From: Macrostomum lignano
Lineage: Eukaryota
Direction of reading: 5' to 3'
DNA length: 64,000 nt
Assembly (NCBI GenBank): GCA_002269645.1
Contig: NIVC01003194.1
Coordinates: 62,001 to 126,000, forward strand
This document shows positions 9,743-63,330 of the stretch, in pieces; position 1 is the stretch's first letter, and each line of letters starts with the position of its first letter. Under the pieces are notes generated by a model that was given only the letters and a program-made list of their open reading frames with translations, was not told where the DNA came from and made no database searches. The position numbers and the translations under genes were made by a program.

Positions 9743-15978
<6,236 letters not shown>

Positions 15979-30819: not shown

Positions 30820-31460
30820 TTTCTCCCTGACTCTCACCCTTCTCTCTCTCCCTTTCGTCTCTCCCTGACTCACACCCTTCTCTCTCTCCCTGACTCTCAC
30901 CCTTCTATCTCTCCCTGACTCTAACCCTTTCGTCTCTCCCTGACTCTCACTCTTCCCTACCGACCTGACTCTCACCCTTCTCTCTCTCCCTGACTCTCCC
31001 TGACAGGGTCAGTCTCTCCCTGACTCTCACCCTTCCCTACCGAGCTGACTCTCACCCTTCTCTCTCTCCCTGTCTCTCACCCTTCTCTCTCTCCCTGACT
31101 CTCACAGGGTCAGTCTCTCCCTGACTCTCACCCTTCCCTACCGAGCTGACTCTCACCCTTCTCTCTCTCCCTGTCTCTCACCCTTCTCTCTCTCCCTGAT
31201 TCTCACCCTTCTCTCTCCCTGACTCTCACTCTTCTCTCTCTCCCTGACTCTCACCCTTTTCTCTCTCCCTGACTCTCACCCTTCTCTCTCTCCCTGACTC
31301 TCGCCCTTTCGTCTCTCCCTGACTCTCACCCTTCTCTCTCTCCCTGACTCTCACCCTTCTCTCTCTCCCTGACTCTCGCCCTTTCGTCTCTCCCTGACTC
31401 TCACCCTTCCCTACCGATCTGACTCTCACCCGGCCTCTCTCTCTCCCTGACTCTCACTGG
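30820..31460. repeat. Pyrimidine-rich array of about 25-27 bp between the convergent NECAB and PMVK ends
   Basis: Unit about CTCTCCCTGACTCTCACCCTTCTCT. Confidence 0.92.
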
Positions 31461-31546
31461 GAGTTATAGAGTTAGAAAGTATATAAAAAGGAAAAAATGC
31501 ACCACTATAGAAAATTCAAAGACAAGATAAGTCTCCAATCAATGTA

Positions 31547-32926
31547 TCAATCAATCAATCTATCAACAAACAGATCAATCCATCGATCAATCTCACTGTC
31601 GCACTCTCCGCCGCTATTATCCAACTCCGAGTCCCACCGCTCCCAGGAGTCCAGTGCGCACTCGGACTCCGCATCGTCAACCCCGGGAACGAAGGCCCAG
31701 CCGCGCCGGGTTCGAGTCTCGTCTGAGGCCCGCAGGCGGAGCAGGTGAACCCGGCCTGGGTAGGCGGACTGGAGTGACAGATCAGGGAGACTGAGGTCAT
31801 CCTTCACAAGCTCCAATTATCACTTTAGTAAAGAAAATGACTTATAGCAATCAAAATATCCTTAGAAACTAGGAATTATCCTAACAACTGGGAATAACCC
31901 TAGCAACCAGGAATAGCCCTAGCAACCCCTTAATATCCCTAGCAAACCGGAAATACACTAGCAACCGGGAGTAACCCTAGCAACTGGGAATAACCTTAGC
32001 AACCGGGAATAACCTTAGCAACCGGGAATAACCTTAGCAACCGAAAATAACCTTAGCAACCGTGAATAACACAGCAACCGGGAATGACGCTAGCAGTCGG
32101 GAATAACCCTAACAAACAATAATAACCCTAGCAACAGGAAATAACCTTAGCATAACCTTAGCAACCGAGCATGACCCTAGCAAACGGGTATAACCCTAAC
32201 ATCCGTAAATAGCCATAGCAACCGGGAATAACCCCAAAAAACCGTGAATAGCCATAGAAACCGGGAATGACCCTAGCAACCGGGAATAGCCATAGAAACC
32301 GGGAATGACCCTAGCAACCGGGAATAGTCATAGAAACCGGGAATGACCGTAGCAACCGGGAATAGCCATAGAAAAACCGGGAATGACCCTAGCAACCGGG
32401 AATAGCCATAGCAACCGGGAATAACCCTAGCAACCGGGTATAACATTAGCTACAAAGAAAAGAATCGCTACTTTGGAATAAAGCAAATCCTTATCAAACC
32501 CTAGAAACCGTAGACACACTCAAAAACAGTCAGTCAGGACAATACCCTCACCAGAAAGTATTGGATATCGGTAGGCCTGCGTACATCTGACACCACCCAG
32601 AGCCCGTCAGGAGGCGGTTGCGCCATCTGCACCGCCAGCCGGCAGAAGCAGCCAGGATCGGCAGCTCGCAGCCGCTCACCCCAGGCGATCATGTCAGCCC
32701 TGAAGGCCTCCTTGTACTCTGTGGAATCCGCCAGTCGGTCTGCATCGAGTTGGTGCAGCCTGGCGTACTCCGCCTTCAGCGGCTGGCTGACCCGAACGCA
32801 AGCGGCTGGAAAGTTGCGCTCAGCCGCGGCGGCTAATATTCGAGAGGTCACGTGATCTTTACCGGATTTGCGCTTGCCGGAGATCAGCAGCAGCTGGCGA
32901 GGCTTGAGACTGCAGTTTGAGGCCGA
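31547..32926 (-). CDS. PMVK: Animal-type phosphomevalonate kinase; join(32926..32552,31768..31547); initiator Met not adjacent (SL-derived or micro-exon 33704..33684)
   Basis: LLLISGKRKSGKDH P-loop, YKEAFRADMIAWGE, WVVSDVRRPTDIQYF, RRGWAFVPGVDDAESECALD. Intron 32551..31769 is GT-AG phase 0. Confidence 0.92.
31850..32450. repeat. Degenerate array of about 19 bp in the PMVK intron
   Basis: Unit about CCCTAGCAACCGGGAATAA. Confidence 0.9.
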
Positions 32927-33049
32927 CTGCAGTTGAGATGAAAGCGGTGGGGCGAATCCAGTTAATATCCTGTACGCACACTGGGACTTGGAATTGGCAT
33001 TTGGCGCTGATGCTTAACCTTCTTGAGGATGATATATGTATGAGGGAAT

Positions 33050-33620
33050 AAAAGATTAAGGGAGAAATGGGGGATGGGGAGCTGAAGGGAGAAATGGGGA
33101 GAGGAGATGGTGGAAATAGGGAGGGAGAGATGAAGGGAGAGATGAAGGGAGGAAGAGATGAAGGGAGAAATGAGATGGACGAGGGATGATGGGAGAAAAT
33201 GTTACAGAAAGAGATGAAGGGAGAGATGAAGTAAGAAATGGGAAAAGGGGAGGAGAGACGAAAAATGGGGAAAGGGGAAGATGCAGGGAGAAATAGGGAG
33301 AAATGAGGAGAGGGAGAGATGAAGGGAGAGATGGGGAGAGGGGGGAGATGAAGGGAGAAATATGGAGAGAAGGAGATGAAGGGAGAGATGAGGAGAGGGA
33401 TTGAGATAGATGAAGGCAGAAATTGGTAGAGGAGATGAAGAAAGAAATGAGATAGACGAGGGATGATGGGAGAAAAGGTTAAAGGTAGAGATGAAGGGAG
33501 AAATGAGGACAGGGACTGATGAAGGAAGAGATGACGGGAGAAATAGGGAAAGGGAAATGAAGGGAGGGATGAGAGAAACCGAAGAGATGAAGGGAGGATA
33601 GAAAGGGAGAGTTAGAAGGC
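33050..33620. repeat. Purine-rich degenerate repeat upstream of PMVK
   Basis: Recurring GGAGAGATGAAG blocks. Confidence 0.8.
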
Positions 33621-34139
33621 AGACGCATAGATAAGGAACTCATGTAGGAGAAGCCAACACCCCAACAGAGCCAGAAAGCTCACTAGCCATATAAAAGCTG
33701 CCATAAATTCAGGACTTTAAGCATATAACACATAGGCCTAGTGCTGTGGCCCCAGTATCTTTTTGTTAGTAAACTTTCAAGTTCCAGCACTATGAATTAT
33801 TACTATGAATATTAGTAGCCACTGGCAAGTTGAACACCAGCACAGTGAGAAAGGCAAACAAAACGCATAAAGTATACAGGCGTTAATGCTATTACTAATG
33901 TGGACAGATACTATAATTTATAAAACTTGTGTGCTCAACGATACGGGGCGTAGCTGAACTGCTGATTAGCAGGTTAATACGATGGATTTTAGATAATTCT
34001 CGACCTTCATTGTCCCGCAGAAGCGTTGTAACATTTCTGGATAGCACACGGACATTGCAGTAGGAATTTTGAAACATTTTCTAAGTGGGGCGCTTTATAT
34101 TCCCGAAGTTTTACAATCTCAAAGTTTTTTAATATCCTC

Positions 34140-35155
34140 AATAGTTCACAACCACAATGTTCACAATCCCCAATAGTTCACAACCACAATGTTCACAATC
34201 CCCAATAGTTCACAATCACGAATAGTTCACAATCCCCAATATTTCACAATCCCCAATAGTTCACAAAAATCCAATAGTTCACAATCCCCAATAGTTGACA
34301 ATCCCCAATAGTTGACAATCCCCAATAGTTCACAATCCCCAATAGTTGACAATCCCCAATAGTTCACCATCCCCAATAGTTCACAATCCCCAATAGTTGA
34401 CAATCCCCAATAGTTGACAATCCCCAATAGTTCACAATCCCCAATAGTTCACCATCCCCAATAGTTCACAATCCCCAATAGTTCACAATCCCCAATAGTT
34501 GACAATCCCCAATAGTTCACAATCCCCAATAGTTCACCATCCCCAATAGTTCACAATCCCCAATAGTTGACAATCCCCAATAGTTCACAATCCCCAATAG
34601 TTCACCATCCCCAATAGTTCACAATCCCCAATAGTTCACAATCCCCAATAGTTGACAATCCCCAATAGTTCACAAACCCAAATAGTTCACAATCCCCAAT
34701 AGTTCACAATCCCTAATAATTCACAACCACAATGTTCACAATTCCAACAGTTCACAATCCTTAATAGTTCGAAATCCACAATAGTTCACAATCCCAAATA
34801 GTTCACAATCCCAAATAGTTCACAATCCCAAATAGTTCACAATCCCAAATAGTTCACAATCCCCAATAGTTCACAATCCCTAATAGTTTACAATCCCCAA
34901 TAGTTCACAATCCCCAATAATTCACAACCACAATGTTCACAATTCCAACAGTTCACAATCCTTAATAGTTCGAAATCCACAATAGTTCACAATCCCTAAT
35001 AGTTCACAATCCCAAATAGTTCACAACCACAATGTTCACAATTCCAACAGTTCACAATCCTTAATAGTTCGAAATCCACAATAGTTCACAATCCCCAATA
35101 GTTCACAATCCCTAATAGTTCACAATCCAGAATAGTTCACAATCCCTAATAGATC
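34140..35155. repeat. 17-bp tandem array
   Basis: Unit CACAATCCCCAATAGTT. Confidence 0.95.
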
Positions 35156-36413
35156 ACAAAAGGTTTCATAAACGTGACTAATATTCCGAATTATAGTCTG
35201 TGAACTAACTCCATAAAAATTGGTAAAGTTTAAGCAGCCCATATTCTGTGTTTGAGGTGTCGAAAAATTGAATTTTATTTGATTATAATGTCAACCTTAT
35301 CAACTATATTTAGGCTAACGCAAGGAATGAAAACGAACACCCTAGCGGACTGCAAGCCGAAACAAAACTAAGTGCTTCTCCAACAAAAACAACAATTTTA
35401 CAAGATGAAAAACCTGCTAAAAACGCCCTGTTCATCAATTAGACTAATTGGATATTTTCCCTACACAAAAGAAGCAAAAGTCTGGCATGCATTCTACTTA
35501 ATGAGCTGGTTTTGTTGGCCAAGAATTGCCAAGAGCCTGGCTCAAAGGTTGCATAGAAATGATCAAGGTTGTTTTCTTAAAACTGTGTATGAGTGCTGTG
35601 CCTTCAGTGAATTTCCGTCAGTAGCTGGCTGTGAGCTTGAAGAAAAGCTACAGAATTACACAATTTTTTAATCATACTGCCAGTTTTTTAAATAAAATTT
35701 AATGAATGAATTCGCCAACAAGTTGCACAACTCGGAAGCTTTTGTTAGCTTCGGGACAATCTGCGAAAATTTATATTATTTAGCATAGCAAATATTAATT
35801 AACAAATTAATACACACGGTAAAATTTATCCATAAAAACTGCTTGCAAAACAACTGATGCTAAAACTCTCCCTTAGTGATTTTTAAAAAAATTCGATATG
35901 TTTGCATTCATGCTTAAACCAGATTAAAGAGAAGGCACAAATTCTTTTGGAGCCAAATATTTGTAGCATAACAGGTAGAAAAAGCTGAAAAAGTGATGGT
36001 AAAACAGGGGTAAAATGCTTACTAAATAAATAATGATGTACAATATTAGTAGCAATATATAATAAGTAATAAAGGTGAATAATCAGTTGTCGGTGTCAAA
36101 ATTTCGCAACTAAGTATTAATAAGTCATGAATCATGCAATTAAAAAATCTGGCCAAAAAACGGAGCACACAATATTGATTTTATTGACTTATTCCAAAGC
36201 TAAAATATAGAAAAAGAGCGTCATAAAAAATTCGATGCACATACACCTGTTGTTTCACTGCAAACAATAATACTGATATGATAGGATAAAGACTTCATGC
36301 AAATACCAGAACAAGGACTACTGACATTGCAAATAACAATTCTTTTAGCTGAGATGGCATTAAAAACGCACAGATGGCATAGAAGTTGATTGTCAATCCA
36401 TCACAACCAGCAT

Positions 36414-38357
36414 TCAGTCTGTCCCGCCGGTGTCCAAGCAGCCCCGCGCGCTCCACACCATCTTGACGCACTCTTCGGCGTCGTTAAACCACCGATGCGG
36501 CCGTCTGACACGACGCTGCAGCAGGCGGATTAGCGACAACAGTCGGGCCTCGAAACGCGAGTTCAGCTCGTTAGCTAAGAGTGGCGCGGAAGTGGAGAAT
36601 GAGGACACGAACTCGGCTACAACCCCGACAGTTGATTCCACCTCTGCTTTGATTGCTGGATCGACAACAAAATTGGCAACATCGTATAAATTGTTTTTAT
36701 CGGCACCCTCGACTTCGCTCTTATCGTCCTTAGCAATCGCATCAATCCATCTAGGCTGCAACGCCAACAAGCCATCATACAGTGGCCAATCATTCTCGCA
36801 AGCAACACAGTCGCAGTCGAACAAATACTGAGCTGCAAGACTTTCTTGACGCTGCTGTTTCGGATGCACAGCCCAATGCAAACCGTAGTTGTCAAGGAGC
36901 TCCTCGCCTTTAGCAATCGGTCGGAGAGCTCGAATCTCCAGTCTCAAACCGGGACAAGTGACTCGCGATACATTCGGATCGCAAGAATGATTAATTAAAC
37001 TAGCCGTTGGATACACAGCCGACCCAATGTCTCTGATAGTCAGTGCAGAAATATCCACTGAGCTGCCATTGTCAGTACTACTACTAGTAGTCAGCCTACT
37101 CGGCGGAGTGGACAATGCAGTTACATCGTGAGCATTGCACGGCACCAGCATCAGATGGCGCAGCAGTGCTGCAACAAGTGGGGCGGCTACATCTAGCTGA
37201 GAATTTGCCTCAGACTCAACACTGAGCAGCAGAGCCATCTGGCAGGCAACGGCGACTCGCTGAGCCAAATCGCGACTCTCTCGCTGTCGTTCTCCAGCTA
37301 CCAAAGCCAGCACCGATTGATAATCGCCAGCAGATCCGAATACCGATTCGAAATCTTTGAAATTCTTTGCCTTAGCAACAGCTTGAGCAACGGAAACCGG
37401 ACCGCCAGCAGCGATCACGGTGGCGAAAGCGAGCCGACCAATGCTCGCATTGAATGCGGAGTCCAACCAGCCAGCCAGCCAGCCGCATTCCACCCTGTGG
37501 ACCGGGTCGTTATCCCGACAATTCTCCGAGCAGAAGCCAACAACTGAGCAGTCGCTACAGGGCAGCAACCGTTGGCAAGGTGCCAAGCAGGCTGAGCAGT
37601 GACTATCGCGAAGATTTGACAGCAGAATGGCGCTAAAAGCCGGCTCAGAGACCAACAGGTCTCCAACATCGACGTCTTCAAGAGTAAGAAGACAGCGACC
37701 GCGACTTTCGTCTGCCAGAGCGAGCTGCACCTTGGCGCTGGCGTGCGGCAGCTGTTGATTAAAATCCCGCAACAACGATTGAGATGCTGCTGCTGGCTGG
37801 GAAACACTTGAGGATTTCGACACTGACATTCTCTTCTGACAGTCAGCGATGCGACCTGTCAGCTTACCGGCCCGCTCGTCGCCATACGGCAACCGTAGAG
37901 CCGCTTCAGCATCGGCTATGGCTTCCGCATAGCAACCGAGACGTTTGAACACCAGCGAACGGTTGGCGAAAGCCACGGCAAGATCCGAGCTACCTGGCTG
38001 GGCGTGCCGGATGCATTCAGAAAATCGCAGCGCCGCTAAACGCAGCAGGCCGCAGTCGAGGGCTTCCAGACCGGCCGAACGAGCTTCCGCTAGGCGAGCT
38101 GGACTCTTGGCGTCGCTAGGCAACGGACGCTGATGCTTTGTCCAGACGGTGGCACTTCTGGCAGCATAGTTAGACCAATCAATCGAGGCAAGCACTCGTT
38201 CGGCAAGGCGAAGTTCGAATTCCATGGATGCCGTGGAATCGTTGAGAATATTGGTTGCTTCGTTTGAGCCTAGCCAGTCAAGAGCTGCGGCTGCGGCTTT
38301 AGTACCGAGCGACTTCATGGACTGCAGCATGCTGCTGCTCTTGACTGGGGATGCCAT
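36414..38357 (-). CDS. SMYD4: SET and MYND domain lysine methyltransferase, SMYD4-like, single exon, 647 aa
   Basis: N-terminal TPR (LAVAFANRSLVFKRLGCYAEAIADAEAAL), split SET (RGRCLLTLEDVDVGDLL), MYND (CSAC..CSDC..FCSENC..HRVEC), LINHSCDPN, ELLDNYG, post-SET FDCDCVAC. The paralog assignment is less certain than the family. Confidence 0.88.
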   Translation of the reverse strand: MASPVKSSSMLQSMKSLGTKAAAAALDWLGSNEATNILNDSTASMEFELRLAERVLASIDWSNYAARSATVWTKHQRPLPSDAKSPARLAEARSAGLEALDCGLLRLAALRFSECIRHAQPGSSDLAVAFANRSLVFKRLGCYAEAIADAEAALRLPYGDERAGKLTGRIADCQKRMSVSKSSSVSQPAAASQSLLRDFNQQLPHASAKVQLALADESRGRCLLTLEDVDVGDLLVSEPAFSAILLSNLRDSHCSACLAPCQRLLPCSDCSVVGFCSENCRDNDPVHRVECGWLAGWLDSAFNASIGRLAFATVIAAGGPVSVAQAVAKAKNFKDFESVFGSAGDYQSVLALVAGERQRESRDLAQRVAVACQMALLLSVESEANSQLDVAAPLVAALLRHLMLVPCNAHDVTALSTPPSRLTTSSSTDNGSSVDISALTIRDIGSAVYPTASLINHSCDPNVSRVTCPGLRLEIRALRPIAKGEELLDNYGLHWAVHPKQQRQESLAAQYLFDCDCVACENDWPLYDGLLALQPRWIDAIAKDDKSEVEGADKNNLYDVANFVVDPAIKAEVESTVGVVAEFVSSFSTSAPLLANELNSRFEARLLSLIRLLQRRVRRPHRWFNDAEECVKMVWSARGCLDTGGTD

Positions 38358-38519
38358 TTGTCTGTTGGAGCTGCTTGACTGGCATGAGATAATGGGTTGG
38401 ATGGGTTACAGGTGAATAAGGCGTGCTCTGTACGACGAGAGTAGAAGCACGAGTACCTAAGAAGTACCTAAGACGTACGATATTCTTACATCTGCGAGTC
38501 TGTGACGCATAGGGTTTTA

Positions 38520-40680
38520 GGTTCGTGTTGCATCTATGGGGTGGTGGTGTATTTATGGCGTGGTGTTGTATCTAGATGGTGATGCTGTATCTATGGCGTA
38601 GTGTGGTGTTGTATCTAGATGGTGATGCTGTATCTATGGTGTGGTGTTGTATCTAGATGGTGATGCTGTATCTATGGTGTGGTATTGTATTTAGATGGTG
38701 ATGCTGTATCTATGGCGTAGTGTTATATTGTATCTAGATGGTGATGCTGTATCTATGGCGTGGTGTTGTATCTAGATGGTGATGCTGTATCTATGGCGTG
38801 GTGTTGTATTGTATCTAGATGGTGATGCTGTATCTATGGCGTGGTGTTGTATCTAGATGGTGATGCTGTATCTATGGCGTGGTGTTGTATCTAGATGGTG
38901 ATGCTGTATCTATGGCGTAGTGTTATATTGTATCTAGATGATGATGCTGTATCTATGGCGTAGTGTTGTATTGTATCTAGATGGTGATGCTGTATCTATG
39001 GCGTAGTGTTATATTGTATCTAGATGGTGATGCTGTATCTATGGCGTAGTGTTGTATTGTATCTAGATGGTGATGCTGTATCTATGGCGTAGTGTTATAT
39101 TGTATCTAGATGGTGATGCTGTATCTATGGCGTGGTGTTGTATCTAGATGGTGATGCTGTATCTATGGCGTAGTGTTATATTGTATCTAGATGGTGATGC
39201 TGTATCTATGGCGTGGTGTTGTATCTAGATGGTGATGCTGTATCTATGGCGTGGTGTTGTATCTAGATGGTGATGCTGTATCTATGGCGTGGTGTTGTAT
39301 TGTATCTAGATGGTGATGCTGTATCTATGGCGTGGTGTTGTATCTAGATGGTGATGCTGTATCTATGGCGTGGTGTTGTATCTAGATGGTGATGCTGTAT
39401 CTATGGCGTAGTGTTATATTGTATCTAGATGATGATGCTGTATCTATGGCGTAGTGTTGTATTGTATCTAGATGGTGATGCTGTATCTATGGCGTAGTGT
39501 TATATTGTATCTAGATGGTGATGCTGTATCTATGGCGTAGTGTTGTATTGTATCTAGATGGTGATGCTGTATCTATGGCGTAGTGTTATATTGTATCTAG
39601 ATGGTGATGCTGTATCTATGGCGTGGTGTTGTATCTAGATGGTGATGCTGTATCTATGGCGTAGTGTTATATTGTATCTAGATGGTGATGCTGTATCTAT
39701 GGCGTAGTGTTGTATTGTATCTAGATGGTGATGCTGTATCTATGGCGTAGTGTTATATTGTATCTAGATGGTGATGCTGTATCTATGGCGTAGTGTTATA
39801 TTGTATCTAGATGGTGATGCTGTATCTATGGCGTGGTGTTGTATCTAGATGGTGATGCTGTATCTATGGCGTAGTGTGGTATTGTATCTAGATGGTGATG
39901 CTGTATCTATGGCGTAGTGTTGTGTTGTATCTAGATGGTGATGCTGTATCTATGGCGTAGTGTTGTATTGTATCTAGATGGTGATGCTGTATCTATGGCG
40001 TAGTGTTATATTGTATCTAGATGGTGATGCTGTATCTATGGCGTGGTGTTGTATCTAGATGGTGATGCTGTATCTATGGCGTAGTGTGGTATTGTATCTA
40101 GATGGTGATGCTATATCTATGGCGTAGTGTTGTGTTGTATCTAGATGGTGATGCTGTATCTATGGCGTGGTGTTATATTGTATCTAGATGGTGATGCTGT
40201 ATCTATGGCGTGGTGTTGTATCTAGATGGTGATGCTGTATCTATGGCGTGGTGTTATATTGTATCTAGATGGTGATGCTGTATCTATGGCGTGGTGTTGT
40301 ATCTAGATGGTGATGCTGTATCTATGGCGTAGTGTTATATTGTATCTAGATGGTGATGCTGTATCTATGGCGTAGTGTTATATTGTATCTAGATGGTGAT
40401 GCTGTATCTATGGCGTAATGTTATATTGTATCTAGATGGTGATGCTGTATCTATGGCGTGGTGTTGTATCTAGATGGTGATGCTGTATCTATGGCGTAGT
40501 GTGGTATTGTATCTAGATGGTGATGCTATATCTATGGCGTAGTGTTGTGTTGTATCTAGATGGTGATGCTGTATCTATGGCGTAGTGTTGTATTGTATCT
40601 AGATGGTGATGCTGTATCTATGGCGTAGTGTTGTATTGTATCTAGATGATGTGATGTATCTATATTAGTATGTTGTATCT
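38520..40680. repeat. 38/43-bp dimeric satellite array
   Basis: Unit GTATCTAGATGGTGATGCT + GTATCTATGGCGTGGTGTT, with a variant 5 bp longer. Confidence 0.96.
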
Positions 40681-41198
40681 ATGTTTGTACCCTACATGTA
40701 TCTGTGTGTTGTATATGTAGGGTAGTGGGGCCTAGAGTCCTATCTGTATTGATTTCGACGTTGTGAGTCTGTTTCACTGAGCTGCAATAAATCATATCAT
40801 GGCATAAAATGAAAATAATGTAGCAATGTATCAAATTATTCCTACTTAAGCTACTTAAAGTAGGATAGTAGGCATTTTATTTTATACTTTAAAATATAAT
40901 AAAACTAGGAAAAATAATAACCGAAACAGCTTAAAACTATCGGAGATTTTATACGTATAACACAACAATTTTTTATAGAGAAAACTGATAATTGCATAGA
41001 TTTGTATAACACTATTGACATGCACGAAAAGCTAAAAACACACGCATTTGGTAACTGATTAACAGACTACTTGGTTTGTAAGTTAAATACTGGTACGAAC
41101 GTATTTGTACAAGACATAAATAAACCAAAACCAAGCGATATTTATAAATGCGAAAATGTCTATGTTTGAACGTTCAAACGGTACAAGAGAAATGTAAG

Positions 41199-42569
41199 CT
41201 AAGCAAGCTTTGAACGTTTAGTCGCGGTGGCAGAGTTAGACTCATCTGCGCTCGAATGTTCAAGTTTCTTTTTCATATCGGTGACAACTTCATCTTTGAT
41301 TTTGATACTTTGATTTGAACTCTCCGACGAGGTGCGTTGAGCACTTTCCAAAGTGCGCTCTGTACTTTCAGAAATGCGTTCCAAAGTGCGCTCTGTACTT
41401 TCCGAAGTACAATGTGCACTTTCCGAAGTGCATTTTGAACTTTCCAAAGTGCGTTCTGTACTTTCAGAAATGCGTTCCAAAGTGCGTTCTGTACTTTTCG
41501 AAGTACAATGTGCACTTTCCGAAGTGCATTTTGAACTTTCCAAAGTGCGTTCTGTACTTGGAATCTCGCATTTAGCTTCTTTTTGAGCTTCTCTATCGAT
41601 TTTTTGATTCTGATCAGACTCGGCGAATCGCCATGGAAACCGTTCACTCTTTCGCGTATGCTTAGAAAACAGTCTCAACGGTTGCAGGCGAAGCAACGGC
41701 CTCAGCATCTCTTCGGCATCAATGCCGAGCAGTTCTCTACAGACCAACGCCATGACAAGATCGCAACGAGCATTTATACGCAGATAACTCTGAGCATCTT
41801 TCTTTGTAGGCTGCAGATTAATAATGACTAATTTGCCGCCCATTGTGGGCAGATCGGCGGCCGGAACAATCTGCAAACTGGTGCCCAGAGTCAGATTAAC
41901 GGTAGCCCGACTGGAATGCTCGCGAGCTCGACGAAGATCTACCTGAGGCAGCTGATGCTCCCAGTCTAGCACCGTGTCCAGCATCTGGCCGCCGCAGATG
42001 CCGTCAACACTGTCACCAGCATCGCCACCGGCTTTGACGGATTTCTTTCTGCCTCGCCTAGCCGGAGCTCCGCACCGCCTCCCGGTGGCTTTCTGACCGA
42101 CCGTCTCCACCGGTTGGTCTCTCGCCCGGTGCAAGCCGCACCGGGCGCACCGCTCAACAAACATATCGCCATGCAAAATCGACAACCGATTGCGAGGAAA
42201 TCCAGACCGAAGGTGCAAACCGTCAACATTCTGCGTCACCAGGTAGTGAACGAATCCGGCCGTTTCCAAGGCAACCAGAGCGGCGTGAGTAAGTGTTGGC
42301 TGAGCCTCTTCAAACTTGGCCCCGGCTTCAACTGTTCGACCTTCGCGTTCTAGAGTCCAGACGCCGTTGGGGCCGCGGAAATCCGGGATTCCGGCCGAGG
42401 TGCTGACGCCGGCTCCCGTGTGGACAACGACTCGAGCTCCGGGCTGTCGAATCAGGTCCACCAGCTGACGAGCTTTCAACTCCCAATCGGCTTGGGACTC
42501 GTGAGTTTCGGGCAGGCCCAGAGTGCCTTTGTCCGAGTATTCGGACAGCCCGGCCGAGTAGTTAGCCGA
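41199..42569 (-). CDS. SIRT6: NAD-dependent deacylase sirtuin 6, single coding exon starting at an acceptor (Met supplied in trans or by an unseen exon; alternative in-frame ATG at 42650)
   Basis: SANYSAGLSEYSDKGTLGLPE matches the SIRT6 N-terminus (MSVNYAAGLSPYADKG type). Also HTGAGVSTSAGIPDFRGPNGVWT, TQNVDGLHLRSG, HGDMF, four Zn cysteines, LDTVLDWE, LGTSLQI and INLQPT. Confidence 0.93.
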   Translation of the reverse strand, partial: SANYSAGLSEYSDKGTLGLPETHESQADWELKARQLVDLIRQPGARVVVHTGAGVSTSAGIPDFRGPNGVWTLEREGRTVEAGAKFEEAQPTLTHAALVALETAGFVHYLVTQNVDGLHLRSGFPRNRLSILHGDMFVERCARCGLHRARDQPVETVGQKATGRRCGAPARRGRKKSVKAGGDAGDSVDGICGGQMLDTVLDWEHQLPQVDLRRAREHSSRATVNLTLGTSLQIVPAADLPTMGGKLVIINLQPTKKDAQSYLRINARCDLVMALVCRELLGIDAEEMLRPLLRLQPLRLFSKHTRKSERFPWRFAESDQNQKIDREAQKEAKCEIPSTERTLESSKCTSESAHCTSKSTERTLERISESTERTLESSKCTSESAHCTSESTERTLERISESTERTLESAQRTSSESSNQSIKIKDEVVTDMKKKLEHSSADESNSATATKRSKLA

Positions 42570-42669
42570 CTGGAGGTGGGAGGAAGGAGATGAACTGTTG
42601 GTGTGTTGCCGTACCGACTGTTTTTCTATAACGTTATGGACCCTAATCATCTCTATTCTCTCTAAAAAA

Positions 42670-44110
42670 TCCCTGCCATCTCTAAACCCCCTTAATCTCA
42701 TTTATCTGTTCTCTCCCCCAATCACAGCCATCTCTAATCCCCCTCAATCCCATTTATCTCTGTTCTCTCCCCCAATCACAGCCATCTCTAATCCCCCTCA
42801 ATCCCATTTATCTCTGTTCTCTGCCCCAATCACAGCCATCTCTAATCCCCCTCAATCCCATTTATCTCTGTTCTCTCCCCCAACCACAGCCATCTCTAAT
42901 CCCCCTCAATCTCATATATCTCTGTTCTCTCCCCCAATCACAGCCATCTCTAATCCCCCTCAATCCCATTTATCTCTGTTCTCTGCCCCAATCACAGCCA
43001 TCTCTAATCCCCTCAATCCTATTTATCTCTGTTCTCTCCCCCAATCACAGCCATCTCTAATCTCATTTATCTCTGTTCTCTCCCCAATCACAGCCACCTC
43101 TAATCCCCTTTAATCTCATTTATCTCTGTTCTCTACCCCAACCACAGCCATCTCTAATCCCCTTTAATCTCATTTATCTCTGTTCTCTACCCCAATCACA
43201 GCCATCTCTAATCCCCCTCAATCTCATTTATCTCTGTTCTCTACCCCAACCACAGCCATCTCTAATCCCCTTTAATCTCATTTATCTCTGTTCTCTACCC
43301 CAACCACAGCCATCTCTAATCCCCTTTAATCTCATTTATCTCTGTTCTCTACCCCAATCACAGCCATCTCTAATCCCCTTTAATCTCATTTATCTCTGTT
43401 CTCTACCCCAATCCCAGCCATCTCTAATCCCCTTTAATCTCATTTATCTCTGTTCTCTACCCCAATCACAGCCATCTCTAATCCCCTTTAATCTCATTTA
43501 GCTATGTTCTCTACCCCAATCCCAGCCATCTCTAATCCCCTTTAATCTCATTTATCTCTGTTCTCTACCCCAACCACAGCCATCTCTAATCCCCTTTAAT
43601 CTCATTTATCTCTGTTCTCTCCCCCAATCACAGCCATCTCTAATCTCATTTATCTCTGTTCTCTCCCCCAATCACAGCCACCTCTAATCCCCTTTAATCT
43701 CATTTATCTCTGTTCTCTACCCCAATCACAGCCATCTCTAATCCCCCTTAATCTCATTTATCTCTGTTCTACCCCAATCCCAGCCATCTCTAATCCCCTT
43801 TAATCTCATTTATCTCTGTTCTACCCCAATCCCAGCCATCTCTAATCCCCTTTAATCTCATTTATCTCTGTTCTACCCCAATCCCAGCCATCTCTAATCC
43901 CCTTTAATCTCATTTATCTCTGTTCTACCCCAATCCCAGCCATCTCTAATCCCCTTTAATCTCATTTATCTCTGTTCTACCCCAATCCCAGCCATCTCTA
44001 ATCCCCTTTAATCTTATTTAACTCTGTTCTCTCCCCCAATCACAGCCATCTCTAATCCCCTTTAATCTTATTTAACTCTGTTCTCTCCCCCAATCACAGC
44101 CATCTCTAGC
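42670..44110. repeat. 54-bp tandem array between DGAT1-like and SIRT6
   Basis: Unit CCCAATCACAGCCATCTCTAATCCCCTTTAATCTCATTTATCTCTGTTCTCTAC. Confidence 0.95.
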
Positions 44111-44480
44111 TTTTAATCTTAATTAATCTCAATTCTCTCAGAATCCCAGCCATTTCTAATCTCCAACTCAGTCTCAATTCATTTCTATTACCTTCCCTAA
44201 TCACAGTCATCTCTAGACTCACTCAATCTCCCTCAAATCTATTCTCTCCTGAAATCTAACATGGACTTTCATTTTAGAATCCAAGACATAATAATAGTAC
44301 AAAAAAGTATACAGAAAGTCTATATGGATAGGAAAACAAAATAAATGTTTATTGCCCCAACAGAATTGTTTATTTATAGAATTTTAATCAACAAAAATTA
44401 AAGAGTTAACAACAGAAAATTATATTGCTAATATAATGTCAATCGTTGCAAATATCTACACAGAAAACGTCAGTTTAATG

Positions 44481-47400
44481 TCAAAGATAGTACTGACAGT
44501 AGTCAGCATAGCCCAGTCTAGCTAGCACTGGCAGGCCAAGCACAAGGCAGAGCCAAACGAAGGCATTGTTGCCGAATCTGACGCAGGCGGCATCCAGAAT
44601 GGGCAGCACGATGGCCACAGTGAGCAGAGGCCACGGCTGGGGCGATCGAAGCACTGCGGACACAACCAGCTGGGCCAGGAGAGCCCAGGCTAGACTAGGC
44701 AGATTGAATTCCGCTGCGGATGGCCACACAGACTTCAGCAGGTTGGTCAGGCTTGAAGCATTCCACCAGAGTCGCTTGGTTTGAGTTAGTTTGCTACTGA
44801 TAGTAGTGTCCTCAGCTGAGGGTTTCTGCTGCTGAAAATATTTTTTTGGTGAAAAATGATTTCTTATGTTTCTTTTTGTGGAATTCTTGCGTTACAATGA
44901 TTGGCATGGAAAGGCATTTCCCAAGCAACTTTTAAAGACGATTCCTAAATAACTTCAAAGGGCGATTCCTAAATAACTTCAAAGGGTGATTCCTAAAAAT
45001 CTTAAAAGCTTACACTAAACTTAGAAACGAACAATGAAAAGCTAAAAATAAAGAAATAGCACTTACAAAGTCACTGCCAGACTGAAAGCAGCAATCCATC
45101 AGTTTCAGAATCCGATCCATTGCCGCTCCTGCAGCCAAGCAGACGGCAATAACAGGAGGCGACAGGCGCAGTTGCCTCTCAACCATTACCAGCCAGTAGG
45201 ACGCATTGTACTCGTAGCTATTAGCAGCTGGATCAGATGAGGCGGCAGCTAGAGAAGGCATTAACCACTGTTGAGTCAGAGCCACTATAGCAACTAATAG
45301 TCCTGCTAGTTGAGCAAAGCTAATTAGTAGCATTCTGTTGACACTGACAACCCGAAGTTCAACGAGTTGCCTAGCAATGCGCTGACGCTGCAGGTGCAAA
45401 TTGGTCAGCTTGAGGAACAGAGCCACACTGATTGACATTCCTGCGAAGCCGACAACTGTTGAAGCGGGAATAGCGAGACGGAGGGTTATATTACACCTGA
45501 GTTTATGGAGTGCATTAACACACCTGGGTTTTATATGGGGTACATTAACACACCAGGGTTTTAAGGGTACAGAGAAGTATTTCAAAAAAGCTTTAATAAA
45601 TCAAGGTATTCAAGGCTGCTCATAACACACTACTCAACCCAAGTTTAAAGATAATAGGAAATACTCACTGGGCGAAGGCCTAGACCACAGCACAATGCAA
45701 GCGGGAGCCACCAGAAGCAGACAGGCACTGCTGGCCACTCCGAGCCTCCGATAGCCAGAAGAAGCGGCAAAAGCAGACGCATTCAGAGCGGCAAAAGCAA
45801 CGCAGACCAGGCCGGCAATGCAGGCTGGACCGCCTCCAACAGCCAGGCAGCTAAGAGGATTTCCAGCCAGAGGGCCGTATCTTAGATGGGACTCTAACAG
45901 ACAGCGAGCGATGCACATCGATAGAAGGATTAGCAATGGGCTTAGTAGGCCTCTGAAAGCGCCTCTGCTTTGGCCTAATTGGCCTGGCCGACTTAGCAGA
46001 CTGTCTGCTGGACTGTGGATCTGCCGACGCCTGGAAGCATTTCCAGCAGGGAAGAGATGCGTCAGGTGAACTATTGAGTATGTTGATATTCAATTAATGG
46101 GATTTAATTTAAGATTTCATTTAAGGTTGTTTAAACATGTAAATTAAAAGCAAGCCCAGGTCTTTGGATTTTTTGTACAGATTGTAAAATCGAATTATAA
46201 TTTTAAGATAAGTAAATGAAATTAGAGCATTATCTAAATTAGCCTGTAACCTAGGTCCTAGATTTGATACTTGAGACAGAAGATACCACCTGAGAGAGTA
46301 GATACCACCTGAGACAGTAGATACCACCTAAGAGACTGTAGATACCACCTGAGAGACAGTAGATACCACCTGAGAGACAGTAGATACCACCTGAGAGAGT
46401 AGATACCACCTGAGAAACAGTAGATACCACCTGAGAGACTGTAGATACCACCTGAGAGACAGTAGATACCACCTGAGAGACTGTAGATACCACCTGAGAG
46501 ACAGTAGATACCACCTGAGACAGTAGATACCACCTGAGAGACAGTAGATACCACCTGAGAGACAGTAGATACCAACTGAGACAGTAGATACCACCTGAGA
46601 CTGTAGATACCACCTGAGAGACTGTAGAGTGTAGATGCCACCTAAGAGACAGTAGATTCCACCTGAGAGACAGTAGATACCACCTGAGACAGTAGATACC
46701 ACCTGAGACTGTAGATACCACCTGAGAGACTGTAGAGTGTAGATGCCACCTAAGAGACAGTAGATACCACCTGAGAGACTGTAGATACCACCTGAGAGAC
46801 AGTAGATACCACCTGAGAGACAGTAGATACCACCTGAGAGACTGTAGATACCACCTGAGAGACAGTAGATACCACCTGAGAGACAGTAGATACCACCTGA
46901 GAAACAGTAGATACCACCTGAGAGACAGTAGATACCACCTGAGACTGTAGATACCATCTGAGAGACTGTAGAGTGTAGATGCCACCTAAGAGACAGTAGA
47001 TACCACCTGAGAGACTGTAGATACCACCTGAGAGACTGTAGATACCACCTGAAGAGACAGTAGATACCACCTGAGAAACAGTAGATACCACCTGAGAGAC
47101 AGTAGATACCACCTGAGACTTTAGATACCACCTGAAAGACTGTAGAGTGTAGATGCCACCTAAGAGACAGTAGATACCACCTGAGAGACTGTAGATACCA
47201 CCTGAGAGACAGTAGACACCACCTGAGAAACAGTAGATACCACCTGAGAGACTGTAGAGTGTAGATGCCACCTAAGAGACAGTAGCTACCATCTGAGAGA
47301 CAGTAGATTATGTAGATACCATCTAAGAGACAGTAGATGCCACCTAAGAGACAGTAGATACCACCTGAGAGACTGTAGATACCACCTGAGAGACAGTAGA

Positions 47401-48233
47401 TACCACCTGAGAAACAGTAGATACCACCTGAGAGACTGTAGAGTGTAGATGCCACCTAAGAGACAGTAGCTACCATCTGAGAGACAGTAGATTATGTAGA
47501 TACCATCTGAGAGACAGTAGATGCCACCTAAGAGACAGTAGCTACCATCTGAGAGACAGTAGATTATGTAGCTACCATCTAAGAGACAGTAGCTACCATC
47601 TGAGAGACAGTAGCTACCACCTAAGATGAGACAGTAGATACCTCTGGCACCCTGGTTTTAAATTTGGCATCCTGAATTCGGACACAGGTAACTAGTGATT
47701 TGTCCTAGGTTTTAAAAGATGTAATACAGCAATGCTGATTGCTGGGTAGGACTTGCTTCATTAGCAACAACAGACTACATTTTAATTAGGCCAACTAACC
47801 CATCTTGATCTTCCGGTACGCTTTGCTGCTCCCAGTCGCATTTCAGCCACGCTAGCAACTGCCTACCAACTATACCAACAGCATTGGCTAGGGCAGACGA
47901 TTTCACAATCGATTTTGCACGACTCCTCAAATCGATGTTTAGATAGGACCGACGACTCAAAGTAGACACCGAATCGAACGAATTTGAACGCCTATGACGA
48001 CGCTTCGGTCGAGAACGTTCAATAACGGTTGACGCAGCGGCGCTACTTGATGTAGAATTCGAAGGCTTAGAAGATTTTTCCGGTGTTTTATCAAGGACAT
48101 TCTTCTTTGGCTGAGCAAGTTTAGTAGAGCTCAGAAGGCGATAATGCGAAGGCGACGGAGCAACAGCAGTCGATCCTTCATCATTAGCGTGAACCAAAGG
48201 CGCCACGGCTATAATACCGCTAGTGAGATGCAT
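44481..48233 (-). CDS. Divergent DGAT1-like MBOAT membrane protein lacking catalytic residues; join(48233..47800,46030..45669,45455..45067,44774..44481), 492 aa
   Basis: HSPADSLLS, FRGLL..IARCLLESHLRYG, LFLKL, TQQWLMPSL, VERQLRLSPP, DFRLWWN, FGNNAFVWLCLVLGLPV..YADY align collinearly with DGAT1. Introns are GT-AG with matching phases 2, 1 and 0. Confidence 0.8.
46265..47640. repeat. 21-bp tandem array, DGAT1-like intron 1
   Basis: Unit GAGACAGTAGATACCACCTGA. Confidence 0.95.
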
Positions 48234-49599
48234 CGAAATGATGTGTTTCTATATTTTACTGACAAACTGACGACAGACCTGACTTCGCTTGATCTATTTG
48301 GAAGGAACGCAAGGGTCTCAAGTGTGATTTATATACTCCTTTTACTGTGCCCAATCCAAGGGGAGTAGGCAGACGCTAACCAAGGCCAATACCTACAGAC
48401 TGACTGACTTGGCTTAAGGAAACAAGCACGCAGCAGAGGGTGGCCGGCGGCGTGGCTGTGCGTGGCATCGTGTGCTATATTTAGAAACAGACTAAAAACG
48501 GGAATCCCCCTACAAGTAGACAGGGGTTTTGAAATGACCTAGAAATAGAAACCCGTCCAGTCGCGCACGCGTGAAGGTCACGCTATGGCTGCGTGGCACA
48601 TGCTATCCTAGTGTAAAATTCTGGGAATTTCGTCATTCTTGCGTTTAGGCTCGGTTGCGTGTTTTGGCGGCAATGGGTTTTTCACTTGTTTATGTACACA
48701 TCAATCATTCCTATTCTGCGTGGCTTGGCTTCAACCCTCGGGACTGGCGTGCTAACTGCGTGATTTTAAATCGATTACATAAAACGAGTACGACCAGATC
48801 TTATTTTCTCTTATCTACTTAGCTTAGCTAGCTAGCTTATACCATTCATGTTCACGTCTCGCTCACGCATCAAATGCATGCGGAGACCAAAATATTAAGT
48901 TATAAACCCAGTCAGTGGGACAGAGTTATATGATTTACCGATACTGTACATAAAAACTTTCAAACTTGTAAAAGTCCACTAGATATAGAAAACTAGTTTT
49001 GTACTTTTTTCTCTCTTTTACTAAGTTAACCTTAACCGCGAGGACCTGTTTTGATTTGAAACACAGCTGCGAGTGGCACCGAGGTGATAACAGCCTCAAA
49101 TTAAAATTGCAATGGCACCCCCACCCCTCAAGTGACACGCGTGTGTAGCTCGTAATAAACAGATAACAACTAGACTGGAGATTAAAATCGCTCCTTAAGT
49201 GAAGTGACTGACTGACTGCCCTTCTTGCTAGTGAAAGACTAATTGTCACCGCACTGAGTTGACAACATAAAGCTAACGCTGATGGAAAATTTCCTTACTA
49301 GATTAGATAATACCCTGTTTGATTATAAAGACTATTTAGTAGGCTAGGTAGATAGTCCTTGGCCAGATACAAAAAAACTTTATTAGCTTTGGCCGTCTGT
49401 AGCTACCCAATCAATTCAAAAAAGTACTTCTATTTTGCTTGACTGGAAAAAAAACCTGACGCGTAGGAAAAATAAGATAAGGCCAGGTCCTAACTGCTGA
49501 TTAGGTTAGGTGGAGAGATAAAAACATAATGACACGGACAGACAGAATTGAGACAATAAATTTAGAAACAAGCAATAACAACTCACATTAAACGTGAGG

Positions 49600-50940: not shown

Positions 50941-51451
50941 GGGAGACAGTATCAATGTTTAGCACTATTTTGTAGCCAGGATAGTAACTACCTAGCAAGG
51001 AATACAAATAAAAGTACAATAAGAACTACAATGTCAGTATCAACTACAGGGACATTATCGTAAATTGTTTCTGTGTATTTTGTTTTACAAATTGAAAACA
51101 AAAACAAAATAGTAATAAAATGGGTAAGAACTTAGAAGCAAAAAGCCGCCATCAGATTTTAAGAAAAGCGCTGACTAAACAGCGAATTGAAAAATAACTA
51201 TATTGGCCAGTAGTGAGGAGGACTCAAAAAAACTCACAGACAATGAATGGGAAGATACCTATGATAAAATTAGCCGATTATGTAAAAATATAAATATAAA
51301 TACTTGTTTGCATATAACAGTATTAATACCAATGGATTCATTGCACAGTATTTCAGTTTACTAGCTATGCAGCTGTCTGGTTAAAATCAAAGCTTAAAAA
51401 TAAATAATTAAATGAGTCTATAATAAGCGGCCTATAATTCAAAATCATAAA

Positions 51452-55692: not shown

Positions 55693-55959
55693 CTAATTGG
55701 CGATGAGTGGCAAAGTTTAATCGGCTGCCTATTGATTATCGAGATAATTGCGCCTATTTGATTAAATAATTTATTCTGACCGCGTGCAGAGGCAGCCGTA
55801 GCCGCTGTAACTTTTATGAGGCCGCGCATGCAATAATAAATAGGCCGCAATATTATTATTACGGTTTATGAGCATTATAATATTGAGGAGTAAGGCACGG
55901 TTCTCTTATCGCCCTGTACAAATTGAAGTCGATTACCTGATTCCTACCCATCCAGAGCC

Positions 55960-62825: not shown

Positions 62826-63330
62826 GGCTGCCAAATTAACATGAGATTTCTGAAAAGTAAGTAATAAAGTTGGTTTTGTTTATTTGTACCGTAGGATTAA
62901 AAAAATTATTTAACACCTAGCACCTTGCATTTTTTAATCGTCAGGGCATGTACCCTCTCAGTACCTTGGGGTTGGCCCAAATGGGTGTGACTGTGAATTA
63001 CACAACCCACTGGCAAATTTTCGTACAGAAACTTTTCGTACCAGTCCACAAACTACAGATTTTTTGTCAACTAATGCTTTAAACCCCTATCTTAGCACTT
63101 TTACTTCTCATCTGAAGACAGAAAAAAATTAATAAAAAAACAAAACATAATCAGAAGTCATTAGAAACTAAACAATAACAGCTAGCAGATTTAATAGAAC
63201 CTAACAGTTCATATTTTATTGAAAAGTGACTACACAAGAATGCAAGCGATCCTGCAGTATCATTAACTTAAACTTAATTCGAAAAAAATCTAAAATCCTA
63301 GAATGGTAAAGTGTGTTTAGGATGCTGTTC

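What the first reader, a model, noticed from the sequence alone, without database searches (positions are those of the whole stretch)
32926..42572. Genes with no start codon of their own: initiator AUG probably donated by the spliced leader
Seen: SIRT6 starts at CCACCTCCAG|TCG GCT AAC TAC, exactly one residue after the conserved Met (M-S-x-N-Y), and I found no ATG|GT micro-exon in the upstream spacer. PMVK starts at CAACTGCAG|TCG GCC with an in-frame stop upstream and no Met until mid-protein. Acceptors before SMYD4 (21 nt), PRELID3 (24 nt) and MICU1 (TAG|GAG) are also phase 0 with the ORF. Established: flatworm SL exons end in AUG, which can act as initiator. Inference: a locus where SL-AUG initiation is obligatory for some genes and phase is conserved for others.
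Basis: partly seen in the sequence, partly recalled or inferred. Interest (0 to 1): 0.8.

Follow-up and report, generated by a model that had tools for sequence, protein, structure and literature searches.

The report
Flatworm genes borrowing spliced-leader start codon
Two conserved enzyme genes (SIRT6 and phosphomevalonate kinase) of the flatworm Macrostomum lignano have no start codon of their own and almost certainly get it from the ATG at the end of the trans-spliced leader. This mechanism has been known in parasitic flatworms since 2006, so these are new examples of a known kind.

Summary
The window is Macrostomum lignano (Mlig_3_7, NIVC01003194.1:62001-126000). Its 35-nt spliced leader ends in ATG.

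**Confirmed.**
- SIRT6 begins at 42569 directly after CTCCAG. Its first residue aligns with residue 2 of human SIRT6.
- PMVK begins at 32926 directly after CTGCAG. There is an in-frame TAA upstream and no Met before residue 79.
- Both acceptors fit the published M. lignano trans-splice motif [T/C]TNCAG.
- The deposited gene models were built by cutting transcripts at peaks of SL-containing reads. They start exactly at these bases in every homeologous copy. An independent UniProt model of PMVK does the same.
- In one SIRT6 homeolog a 3-nt insertion puts a TAG between the upstream in-frame ATG and the conserved acceptor. The ORF there stays under purifying selection (dN/dS about 0.25).

**The "phase conserved" half is weak.**
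- PRELID3 is a supported SL site in phase (24 nt).
- The SMYD4 acceptor is unsupported and is out of phase in a homeolog (20 nt).
- The MICU1 claim is an artefact of a 1-nt deletion in this copy. MICU1 has its own ATG.

The mechanism is already established for Schistosoma and Echinococcus. Verdict: real, but a new member of a known kind. Interest is low to moderate.

The parts
42570..42575 (-). SIRT6 trans-splice acceptor CTCCAG, preceded by a pyrimidine tract (ttcatctccttcctcccac)
   Evidence: Sequence. It matches the [T/C]TNCAG motif of M. lignano SL acceptors. It is conserved in homeologs L005, L006 and L009.
41199..42569 (-). SIRT6 single-exon coding sequence without an ATG (456 codons plus stop). 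It starts at Ser2 of the conserved M-S-x-N-Y N-terminus. The first internal Met is residue 136, after the catalytic His.
   Evidence: The deposited protein P0001 starts SANYSAGL in three contigs.
42576..42701 (-). Outron segment with in-frame ATGs at 42701-42699 and 42650-42648. The first lies in the last copy of the 54-nt minisatellite.
   Evidence: In homeolog L009 an ATT insertion creates an in-frame TAG between these ATGs and the acceptor.
42668..44108 (.). 54-nt minisatellite (about 27 copies) filling most of the spacer upstream of SIRT6
32927..32932 (-). PMVK trans-splice acceptor CTGCAG
   Evidence: It matches [T/C]TNCAG. It reads CCGCAG in L005 and L009, and the AG is kept.
32552..32926 (-). 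PMVK exon 1 (starts SASNCSLKPRQLLLISGKRKSGKD; no ATG before codon 79 at 32692-32690)
   Evidence: The deposited P0127 and the independent UniProt A0A1I8GE39 (P0128) both start SASNCS.
31547..31768 (-). PMVK exon 2 with stop codon. The intron 32551..31769 (GTGAGG...CTCCAG) contains a 19-nt tandem repeat.
   Evidence: The splice model reproduces the deposited 198-aa protein exactly.
33014..33016 (-). In-frame TAA upstream of the PMVK acceptor
33060..33650 (-). About 600 nt of 80-92% pyrimidine low-complexity sequence (ctcccttcatctc-like) upstream of the PMVK acceptor; presumed outron
   Evidence: Its length varies between homeologs.
33684..33704 (-). Rival candidate cis exon ATG GCA GCT TTT ATA TGG CTA (MAAFIWL), followed by a GTGAGC donor at 33683. 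It would be in phase with PMVK exon 1.
   Evidence: It is present in all homeologs, but so is all non-repeat flanking DNA. No deposited model uses it.
62256..62855 (-). PRELID3: acceptor TTTCAG (62855-62850); exon from 62849; 24 in-frame nt (KSHVNLAA); own ATG at 62825-62823; single-exon CDS to 62256
   Evidence: The deposited 197-aa 'partial' proteins (window copy P0124 and PAA85775.1) begin KSHVNLAAMRVW.
36414..38380 (-). SMYD4-like SET gene: candidate acceptor AG at 38380-38379 (TGCCAG, does not fit the motif); own ATG at 38357-38355; single-exon ORF to 36414
   Evidence: The deposited CDS starts at 38354, directly after the genomic ATG. The acceptor-to-ATG distance is 20 nt in L009.
55623..55836 (-). 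MICU1 5' end: genomic ATG at 55829-55827, preceded by TTATTGC (matching the last 10 nt of the SL). A 1-nt deletion next to 55675 shifts the frame in this copy.
46021..46022 (-). AG acceptor (ggcag|ATC) of an unnamed 357/362-aa multi-pass membrane protein gene. The ORF is open in phase 0 from this site.
   Evidence: The deposited CDSs of L005 and L006 start directly after it. The window copy is annotated 15 nt further down.

Best explanation
SIRT6 and PMVK of Macrostomum lignano are transcribed as pre-mRNAs whose 5' part (the outron, largely minisatellite or pyrimidine-rich sequence) is removed by spliced-leader trans-splicing. The acceptors are CTCCAG|TCG (42570|42569) and CTGCAG|TCG (32927|32926).

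The 35-nt SL exon (...UUAUUGCAUG) is joined so that its terminal AUG sits directly in front of codon 2. The mature mRNAs then read cap-32 nt-AUG-UCG-GCU-AAC (M-S-A-N-Y...) and AUG-UCG-GCC-UCA (M-S-A-S...). A scanning ribosome meets the SL AUG first and starts there. This gives proteins whose N-termini match their orthologues.

The genes encode no usable initiator of their own, so trans-splicing is obligatory for making functional protein. The genes lie in a same-strand cluster: PRELID3, a zinc-finger gene, MICU1, a 357-aa membrane protein gene, SIRT6, SMYD4 and PMVK. The spacers of this cluster are mostly tandem repeats, so some of these genes may be downstream members of polycistronic units.

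- **Shown:** the sequence anatomy, the organism, the SL sequence (from the literature), the annotation 5' ends and the homeolog comparison.
- **Inferred:** that SL-bearing reads exist at exactly these sites, and that translation starts at the SL AUG.
For: - **Organism and SL.** Searches identify the window as NIVC01003194.1:62001-126000. One search gives the SL as CGGTCTCTTACTGCGAAGACTCAATTTATTGCATG, followed by a GTAAG donor.
- **Acceptors.** Both fit the enriched trans-acceptor motif [T/C]TNCAG positioned at the junction.
- **N-termini.** SIRT6 residue 1 aligns with human residue 2. Orthologues start MSVNY or MSLDY. With one added Met, the PMVK P-loop Gly is residue 18, within the range of 12-21 seen in five orthologues.
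- **No usable genomic start.** PMVK has an in-frame TAA upstream, and its first Met is residue 79, after the P-loop. The first internal Met of SIRT6 is residue 136, after the catalytic His. The SIRT6 spacer holds no ATG-donating exon.
- **Annotation.** The Mlig_3_7 pipeline cuts transcripts at peaks of SL-containing reads and then runs TransDecoder. The deposited 'partial' CDSs start exactly at 42569 and 32926 in all copies. An independent UniProt PMVK model from the earlier assembly does the same.
- **Homeolog L009.** An in-frame TAG lies between the upstream ATG and the conserved acceptor, while the 435-codon ORF is intact. There are 16 synonymous against 14 non-synonymous differences (dN/dS 0.27, or 0.24 over the first 300 codons).
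- **Precedent.** SL AUG initiation is reported in S. mansoni, including SmSirt7, and in E. granulosus.
Against: - I saw no SL-containing read or cDNA directly. Trans-splicing at these two sites is inferred from where the deposited models begin.
- These models are noisy at other genes. Annotated 5' ends differ by 3-15 nt between identical copies (PRELID3 in L011; the 357-aa gene). SMYD4 starts oddly, right after its genomic ATG.
- 7 of the 8 gene models in the region are 'partial', so a missing Met in a deposited protein is not informative on its own.
- For PMVK, a plausible cis exon (MAAFIWL plus a consensus GTGAG donor, in phase) exists 757 nt upstream and cannot be excluded by conservation.
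- In the window copy of SIRT6 the upstream ATGs at 42650 and 42701 are in frame and open.
- Use of the SL AUG by ribosomes is untested here. Its context (U at -3, U at +4) is weak by vertebrate Kozak rules (my own knowledge).
Confidence: 0.85

Rival explanations
1. PMVK (and possibly SIRT6) gets its ATG from an unannotated upstream exon joined in cis to the same acceptor. For PMVK this would be ATG GCA GCT TTT ATA TGG CTA|GTGAGC at 33704..33684, giving MAAFIWL-SASNCS...
For: The exon-like element exists, with a consensus GT[G/A]AG donor, and is in phase. It is retained in all three homeologs. In parasitic flatworms, cis- and trans-splicing extensively share 3' splice sites.
Against: No deposited model in any of at least four PMVK copies, nor the independent UniProt model, contains it; all start at the acceptor. 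Conservation is uninformative, because all non-repeat flanking DNA is equally conserved. The hydrophobic 7-residue extension has no counterpart in orthologues. For SIRT6, no such exon exists anywhere in the 1.9-kb spacer.
Confidence: 0.07
2. SIRT6 is translated from a transcript that is not trans-spliced. It would use the in-frame genomic ATG at 42650 (or 42701) and carry a 27- or 44-residue N-terminal extension.
For: Both ATGs are in frame with no stop in the window copy and in L005 and L006.
Against: In homeolog L009 a 3-nt insertion creates an in-frame TAG downstream of these ATGs, while the ORF stays intact and constrained and the acceptor is unchanged. The ATG at 42701 is part of a minisatellite copy. 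The extension runs through the polypyrimidine tract and acceptor. All deposited models start at 42569. The orthologue N-terminus M-S-x-N-Y is reproduced exactly only with the SL AUG.
Confidence: 0.03
3. The missing start codons are defects of assembly or annotation, or the copies are decaying pseudogenes. MICU1 in this same window shows that kind of defect.
For: The assembly is PacBio-based, and most models are 'partial'.
Against: The same ATG-less junction is present in four separately assembled SIRT6 copies and in at least three PMVK copies. The sequence at the junction is a canonical acceptor, not a truncated ATG. The ORFs are intact, and SIRT6 has dN/dS of about 0.25 between homeologs.
Confidence: 0.03

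Closest known systems
Schistosoma mansoni / S. japonicum mRNAs that use the SL 3'-terminal AUG as initiator methionine (Cheng, Cohen, Ndegwa & Davis 2006, J Biol Chem 281:733; seen here only through citing papers)
   Same: The SL exon ends in AUG. The acceptor sits in phase 0 directly before codon 2 of a conserved protein. No genomic initiator is present, so more than 40 cDNAs were reported to need the SL AUG.
   Different: The organism differs: this is a free-living macrostomorph, not a neodermatan parasite. The SL sequence differs apart from its 3' end. Here the evidence is genomic plus annotation, not cDNA or translation assays.
SmSirt7 of S. mansoni (Lancelot et al. 2013, PMC3772001)
   Same: It is a class IV sirtuin whose full-length transcript starts with the SL and whose initiating ATG is provided by the SL.
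   Different: It is the paralogue Sirt7, not Sirt6. SmSirt6 was not reported there to use the SL AUG. That case was demonstrated by RACE; this one was not.
Echinococcus granulosus SL-bearing transcripts (Parkinson et al. 2012, PMC3510090)
   Same: 143 of 187 SL clusters are full length when the SL ATG is taken as the start. In some, the SL AUG is required to match orthologue N-termini. Use of the SL AUG is conserved among Neodermata.
   Different: That was a cestode EST survey, and SIRT6 and PMVK were not named. E. granulosus SIRT6 is predicted with its own Met (MSLDY).
slORFs: reading frames created by start codons inside spliced leaders in nematodes, Oikopleura and trypanosomes (Song et al. 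2023, PMC9851317)
   Same: Trans-splicing supplies the initiation codon.
   Different: Those cases mostly use near-cognate codons and alternative or extended ORFs. They are not the sole initiator of conserved enzymes.

Membership tests
Flatworm mRNAs initiating at the SL 3'-terminal AUG (Cheng et al. 2006 class) | The organism's spliced-leader exon ends in AUG, followed by a GU donor | tested here: met
   The organism was identified as M. lignano. The published SL is ...TTATTGCATG, followed by GTAAG. The ATG is conserved in M. cliftonense and M. hystrix.
Flatworm mRNAs initiating at the SL 3'-terminal AUG (Cheng et al. 2006 class) | The mRNA is SL trans-spliced at the acceptor in question | tested here: met
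   The evidence is indirect. The deposited CDSs come from a pipeline that cuts at SL-read peaks. They start exactly after CTCCAG and CTGCAG in all copies. The acceptors fit [T/C]TNCAG. No SL-junction read was seen directly.
Flatworm mRNAs initiating at the SL 3'-terminal AUG (Cheng et al. 2006 class) | The acceptor is in phase 0 with the main ORF, with no stop between the junction and the conserved protein | tested here: met
   SIRT6: S1 aligns with human S2. PMVK: the ORF is open from the first exon base.
Flatworm mRNAs initiating at the SL 3'-terminal AUG (Cheng et al. 2006 class) | No genome-encoded AUG can give a functional protein (the obligatory subclass) | tested here: met
   PMVK: TAA upstream, and the first Met is residue 79, after the P-loop. 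SIRT6: the first internal Met is residue 136; the outron ATGs are cut off by a TAG in homeolog L009; no ATG-donating exon lies in the spacer. Caveats: a possible PMVK cis exon, and the window-copy SIRT6 outron ATGs remain open.
Flatworm mRNAs initiating at the SL 3'-terminal AUG (Cheng et al. 2006 class) | Ribosomes actually initiate at the SL AUG (protein N-terminus Met/Ser-Ala-...) | not testable with these tools
   This needs N-terminal proteomics, ribosome profiling or reporter assays.
M. lignano operon (Ustyantsev & Berezikov 2021 criterion) | Adjacent same-strand genes, the downstream one SL trans-spliced, with repeat-adjusted intergenic distance under 1 kb | tested here: inconclusive
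   The genes are on the same strand. The spacer from the 357-aa gene to SIRT6 is 1,911 nt, of which 1,441 nt is minisatellite. The SIRT6-to-SMYD4 spacer is 2,842 nt, of which 2,101 nt is repeat. These were measured from CDS ends, not from poly(A) sites, which I do not have.

The most novel reading that the evidence does not exclude
Start codons may move in both directions between the spliced leader and the genome within this one gene cluster. SIRT6 and PMVK have lost their genomic ATG and depend on the SL. The genomic ATG of MICU1 (55829-55827) sits at the end of TTATTGCATG, the last 10 nt of the SL. That could be a fossil of an SL-bearing cDNA copied back into the locus. If so, a once SL-donated initiator would have become genome-encoded.
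Probability: 0.1. Interest if true: 0.6.

Novelty: new member of a known kind. Interest (0 to 1): 0.25.

Why it matters
- **Phylogenetic reach.** It extends obligatory SL-AUG initiation from parasitic Neodermata to an early-branching free-living flatworm, a laboratory model that can be made transgenic. This argues that the initiator role of the conserved SL AUG is old within Rhabditophora.
- **Annotation.** GenBank and UniProt entries for such M. lignano genes are labelled 'partial' and lack Met1, although the proteins are complete once the SL is added. Any N-terminal analysis, expression construct or knock-in design needs to take this into account.
- **Reporter design.** The genomic region upstream of these genes cannot drive an ATG-less reporter unless the acceptor is kept in phase.

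Tried and rejected
- **Direct transcript evidence.** Exact look-ups of M+SIRT6 (457 aa) and of the two upstream-ATG versions of SIRT6 found nothing in the protein collection. No Logan or other transcript-derived Macrostomum relatives of SIRT6 or PMVK turned up in the homology searches. SL junctions could therefore not be seen directly.
- **Systematic first-codon stripping.** I suspected for a while that the deposited proteins lack Met because the database or annotation drops the first codon, since SMYD4 is deposited starting right after its ATG. I rejected this: the zinc-finger gene is deposited from its ATG, and the SIRT6, PMVK and PRELID3 models start after CAG, not after ATG.
- **Conservation test of the PMVK cis exon.** This was uninformative, because the homeologs are nearly identical throughout the non-repeat spacer.
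- **Phase-bias test.** It was not possible. The look-up tool shows CDS extents, not mRNA 5' ends. SL sites can therefore only be recognised when they are already in phase and open, which makes the test circular.
- **Papers.** Wasik 2015 and Cheng 2006 are not held in the library. Cheng 2006 is cited only through papers that describe it.
- **SL RNA gene in the window.** No copy was found. The last 13 nt of the SL have no match better than 2 mismatches, which is the chance level.

Full report
**Identity of the window.** The SIRT6 ORF was used as a probe. It returned an identical 456-aa protein present on three contigs of GCA_002269645.1, the Macrostomum lignano Mlig_3_7 assembly. Locus L004 from NIVC01003194.1 is the exact reverse complement of window 31199..52569. 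The window is therefore NIVC01003194.1:62001-126000.

M. lignano has a single 35-nt spliced leader, CGGTCTCTTACTGCGAAGACTCAATTTATTGCATG, followed in the SL RNA gene by a GTAAG donor.

**The two core genes: SIRT6.**
- The minus strand reads ...ttcatctccttcctcccacctccag|TCG GCT AAC TAC.
- The encoded SANYSAGLSEY... aligns from its very first residue with residue 2 of human SIRT6.
- Orthologues, including Echinococcus, start MSVNY or MSLDY.
- The first internal Met is residue 136, beyond the NAD-binding motif and the catalytic His.

**The two core genes: PMVK.**
- The strand reads ...tcaactgcag|TCG GCC TCA.
- An in-frame TAA lies at 33016..33014.
- The first in-frame Met is residue 79, after the GKRKSGKD P-loop.
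- A two-exon model (32926..32552 and 31768..31547) reproduces the deposited 198-aa protein. That protein matches human PMVK at E = 1e-47.
- With one added Met, the length of the N-terminal leader before the P-loop falls within the range seen in orthologues.

Both acceptors, CTCCAG and CTGCAG, fit the motif [T/C]TNCAG. Ustyantsev and Berezikov found this motif enriched exactly at M. lignano SL acceptor junctions.

**Independent support from the deposited annotation.** The Mlig_3_7 gene models were made in three steps. [quoted passage not shown] Transcripts were cut at the resulting peaks (TBONE). TransDecoder was then run. An ORF that is open to the 5' end of such a transcript is deposited as a 5'-partial CDS starting at the first in-frame base.
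- The deposited SIRT6 CDS starts at 42569 in all three annotated copies.
- The deposited PMVK CDS starts at 32926 or its equivalent in every copy.
- An independent UniProt model from the earlier assembly (A0A1I8GE39) also begins SASNCS.
- The same holds for PRELID3.

These models are not perfect. 5' ends scatter by 3-15 nt between identical copies of two other genes, and 7 of the 8 models in the region are partial. A missing Met alone therefore means little. What carries weight is the exact coincidence with a consensus acceptor in all copies of SIRT6 and PMVK.

- *SIRT6 starting at the unspliced ATG at 42650.* The window copy and two near-identical copies leave this open. The more diverged homeolog on NIVC01001474.1 (L009) has a 3-nt insertion that creates an in-frame TAG between that ATG and the acceptor. 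Its acceptor is unchanged, and its 435-codon ORF is intact. It differs from the window copy by 16 synonymous against 14 non-synonymous changes, giving dN/dS of 0.27. The upstream stretch is therefore not coding. The whole 1.9-kb spacer also lacks any ATG|GT and any ATG-started phase-0 exon with a GT[AG]AG donor.
- *PMVK cis exon.* MAAFIWL|GTGAGC at 33704..33684 is real and in phase. It is the only serious rival. It is conserved among homeologs, but so is all neighbouring unique DNA. No model uses it. I give it about 7%.

**The remaining claims.**
- *PRELID3* is a supported SL site. Its SL AUG would be in frame 24 nt upstream of the gene's own ATG. It would add MKSHVNLAA unless ribosomes scan past the SL AUG.
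- *SMYD4.* The AG 21 nt upstream exists. However, it does not fit the motif, it is not where the deposited model starts, and it lies 20 nt from the ATG in homeolog L009. Phase is not conserved there.
- *MICU1* is refuted. The exon looks ATG-less and in frame with TAG|GAG only because this copy lacks one C next to 55675. With that C (L010), or in L011 where the 497-aa model is in this frame, the ORF runs from a genomic ATG at 55829..55827. It passes through a presequence-like MRGLIKVTAATAASARGQ... into the transmembrane segment and the conserved MICU1 core.

Of the three 'phase-conserved' genes only one survives, which is what chance predicts.

**Mechanism.** The pre-mRNAs may be parts of polycistronic units. 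All eight genes from PRELID3 to PMVK are on one strand, and their spacers are mostly minisatellites. Ustyantsev and Berezikov subtract such repeats when calling operons.

The pre-mRNAs are trans-spliced at the two acceptors. The SL contributes the cap, 32 nt of leader and the AUG. The first codon of the body is codon 2. Translation from that AUG gives full-length SIRT6 and PMVK.
- Shown here: the anatomy and the annotation-level support.
- Inferred: SL junction reads at these sites and ribosomal use of the SL AUG.
- Confidence: 0.85.

**Comparison with what is known.**
- Cheng et al. (2006) reported that the S. mansoni SL AUG is in frame in 28% of trans-spliced transcripts and is required by more than 40 cDNAs (as summarised).
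- SmSirt7 takes its ATG from the SL.
- In E. granulosus, 143 of 187 SL clusters are full length with the SL ATG, and this use is conserved in Neodermata.
[quoted passage not shown] They do not list genes that depend on the SL AUG.

The finding is therefore a new member of a known kind. These are new, well-defined examples in a basal free-living flatworm, with a practical consequence for how its 'partial' proteins should be read.

**Limits.** I could not see RNA reads or read Cheng 2006 itself. I could not test genome-wide phase bias, because only CDS extents of a handful of genes in three homeologous regions were accessible.

Noticed in passing
window 55827-55836 (- strand); L010 about 17182-17197; L011 about 16926-16941: The MICU1 genomic start codon is the end of TTATTGCATG, identical to the last 10 nt of the M. 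lignano SL. This 10-mer occurs once in the window (0.11 expected). In an SL-anchored alignment, this ATG scores best of all 1,970 ATGs, though only narrowly (22 against 21, 21 and 20). In homeolog L011 it reads TTATTTCATG. It could be chance in an AT-rich promoter, or a relic of an SL-bearing cDNA.
   Followed up: partly
window about 55675 (- strand), compared with L010: The window copy of MICU1 lacks one C (CCAATGC-GATAG against CCAATGCCGATAG). This shifts the frame between the presequence and the rest of the protein. The deposited models are fragmented accordingly: 323 aa from 55623 here, 252 aa from an internal Met in L010, and 497 aa in L011. I cannot tell an assembly indel from a real frameshift allele.
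   Followed up: partly
window 38354-38357 (- strand); also L005 12857 and L009 10001: The deposited SMYD4-like protein (646 aa, 'partial') starts at the codon directly after the genomic ATG in all three copies. The L011 MICU1 model likewise starts two codons after its ATG. Possible causes are a very short 5' UTR with a truncated transcript assembly, or reads that begin with ATG being treated as SL-containing. This is unexplained.
   Followed up: partly
window 31872-32459, 34134-35159, 38563-40663, 42668-44108, 46273-46972, 56000-56400, 63340-64000: Every intergenic spacer of the same-strand gene cluster, and the PMVK intron, is filled with a different minisatellite array (units of 17-54 nt, up to 61 copies). 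Array lengths differ between homeologs.
   Followed up: partly
window 41199-41560 (- strand); L009 7867-9171: The C-terminal tail of SIRT6 is built from tandem 96-nt units (STERTLE.../SSKCTSESAHCTSE). Copy number differs between homeologs (456 against 435 aa). The L009 copy is intact but has no separate deposited gene model.
   Followed up: partly
window 44481-46022 (- strand): An unnamed gene for a 357/362-aa multi-pass membrane protein, with no Pfam hit on record, lies between MICU1 and SIRT6. In two homeologs its deposited CDS starts directly after ggcag|, with the ORF open in phase 0. It may be a third SL-AUG user. Its first genomic in-frame ATG is about 30 codons downstream of the window copy's deposited CDS start. 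No orthologue was available to fix the N-terminus.
   Followed up: partly
window 15780-15940 (- strand): The first kinase-domain exon of an AMPK-alpha-like gene is preceded by two TTACAG acceptors that fit the trans-acceptor motif. Both are out of phase with the ORF. The only in-frame ATG (15938) lies upstream of them, so its true 5' structure is unclear.
   Followed up: no
window 1629-2703 (- strand): Reverse-transcriptase-like ORF fragments, probably from a LINE-type retroelement.
   Followed up: no
window 42569-42565 and 32926-32922 (- strand): Both ATG-less genes start with the same five bases after the acceptor (CAG|TCGGC, giving Ser-Ala). Both mature mRNAs would therefore read UUGCAUGUCGGC. 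This may be a coincidence.
   Followed up: no
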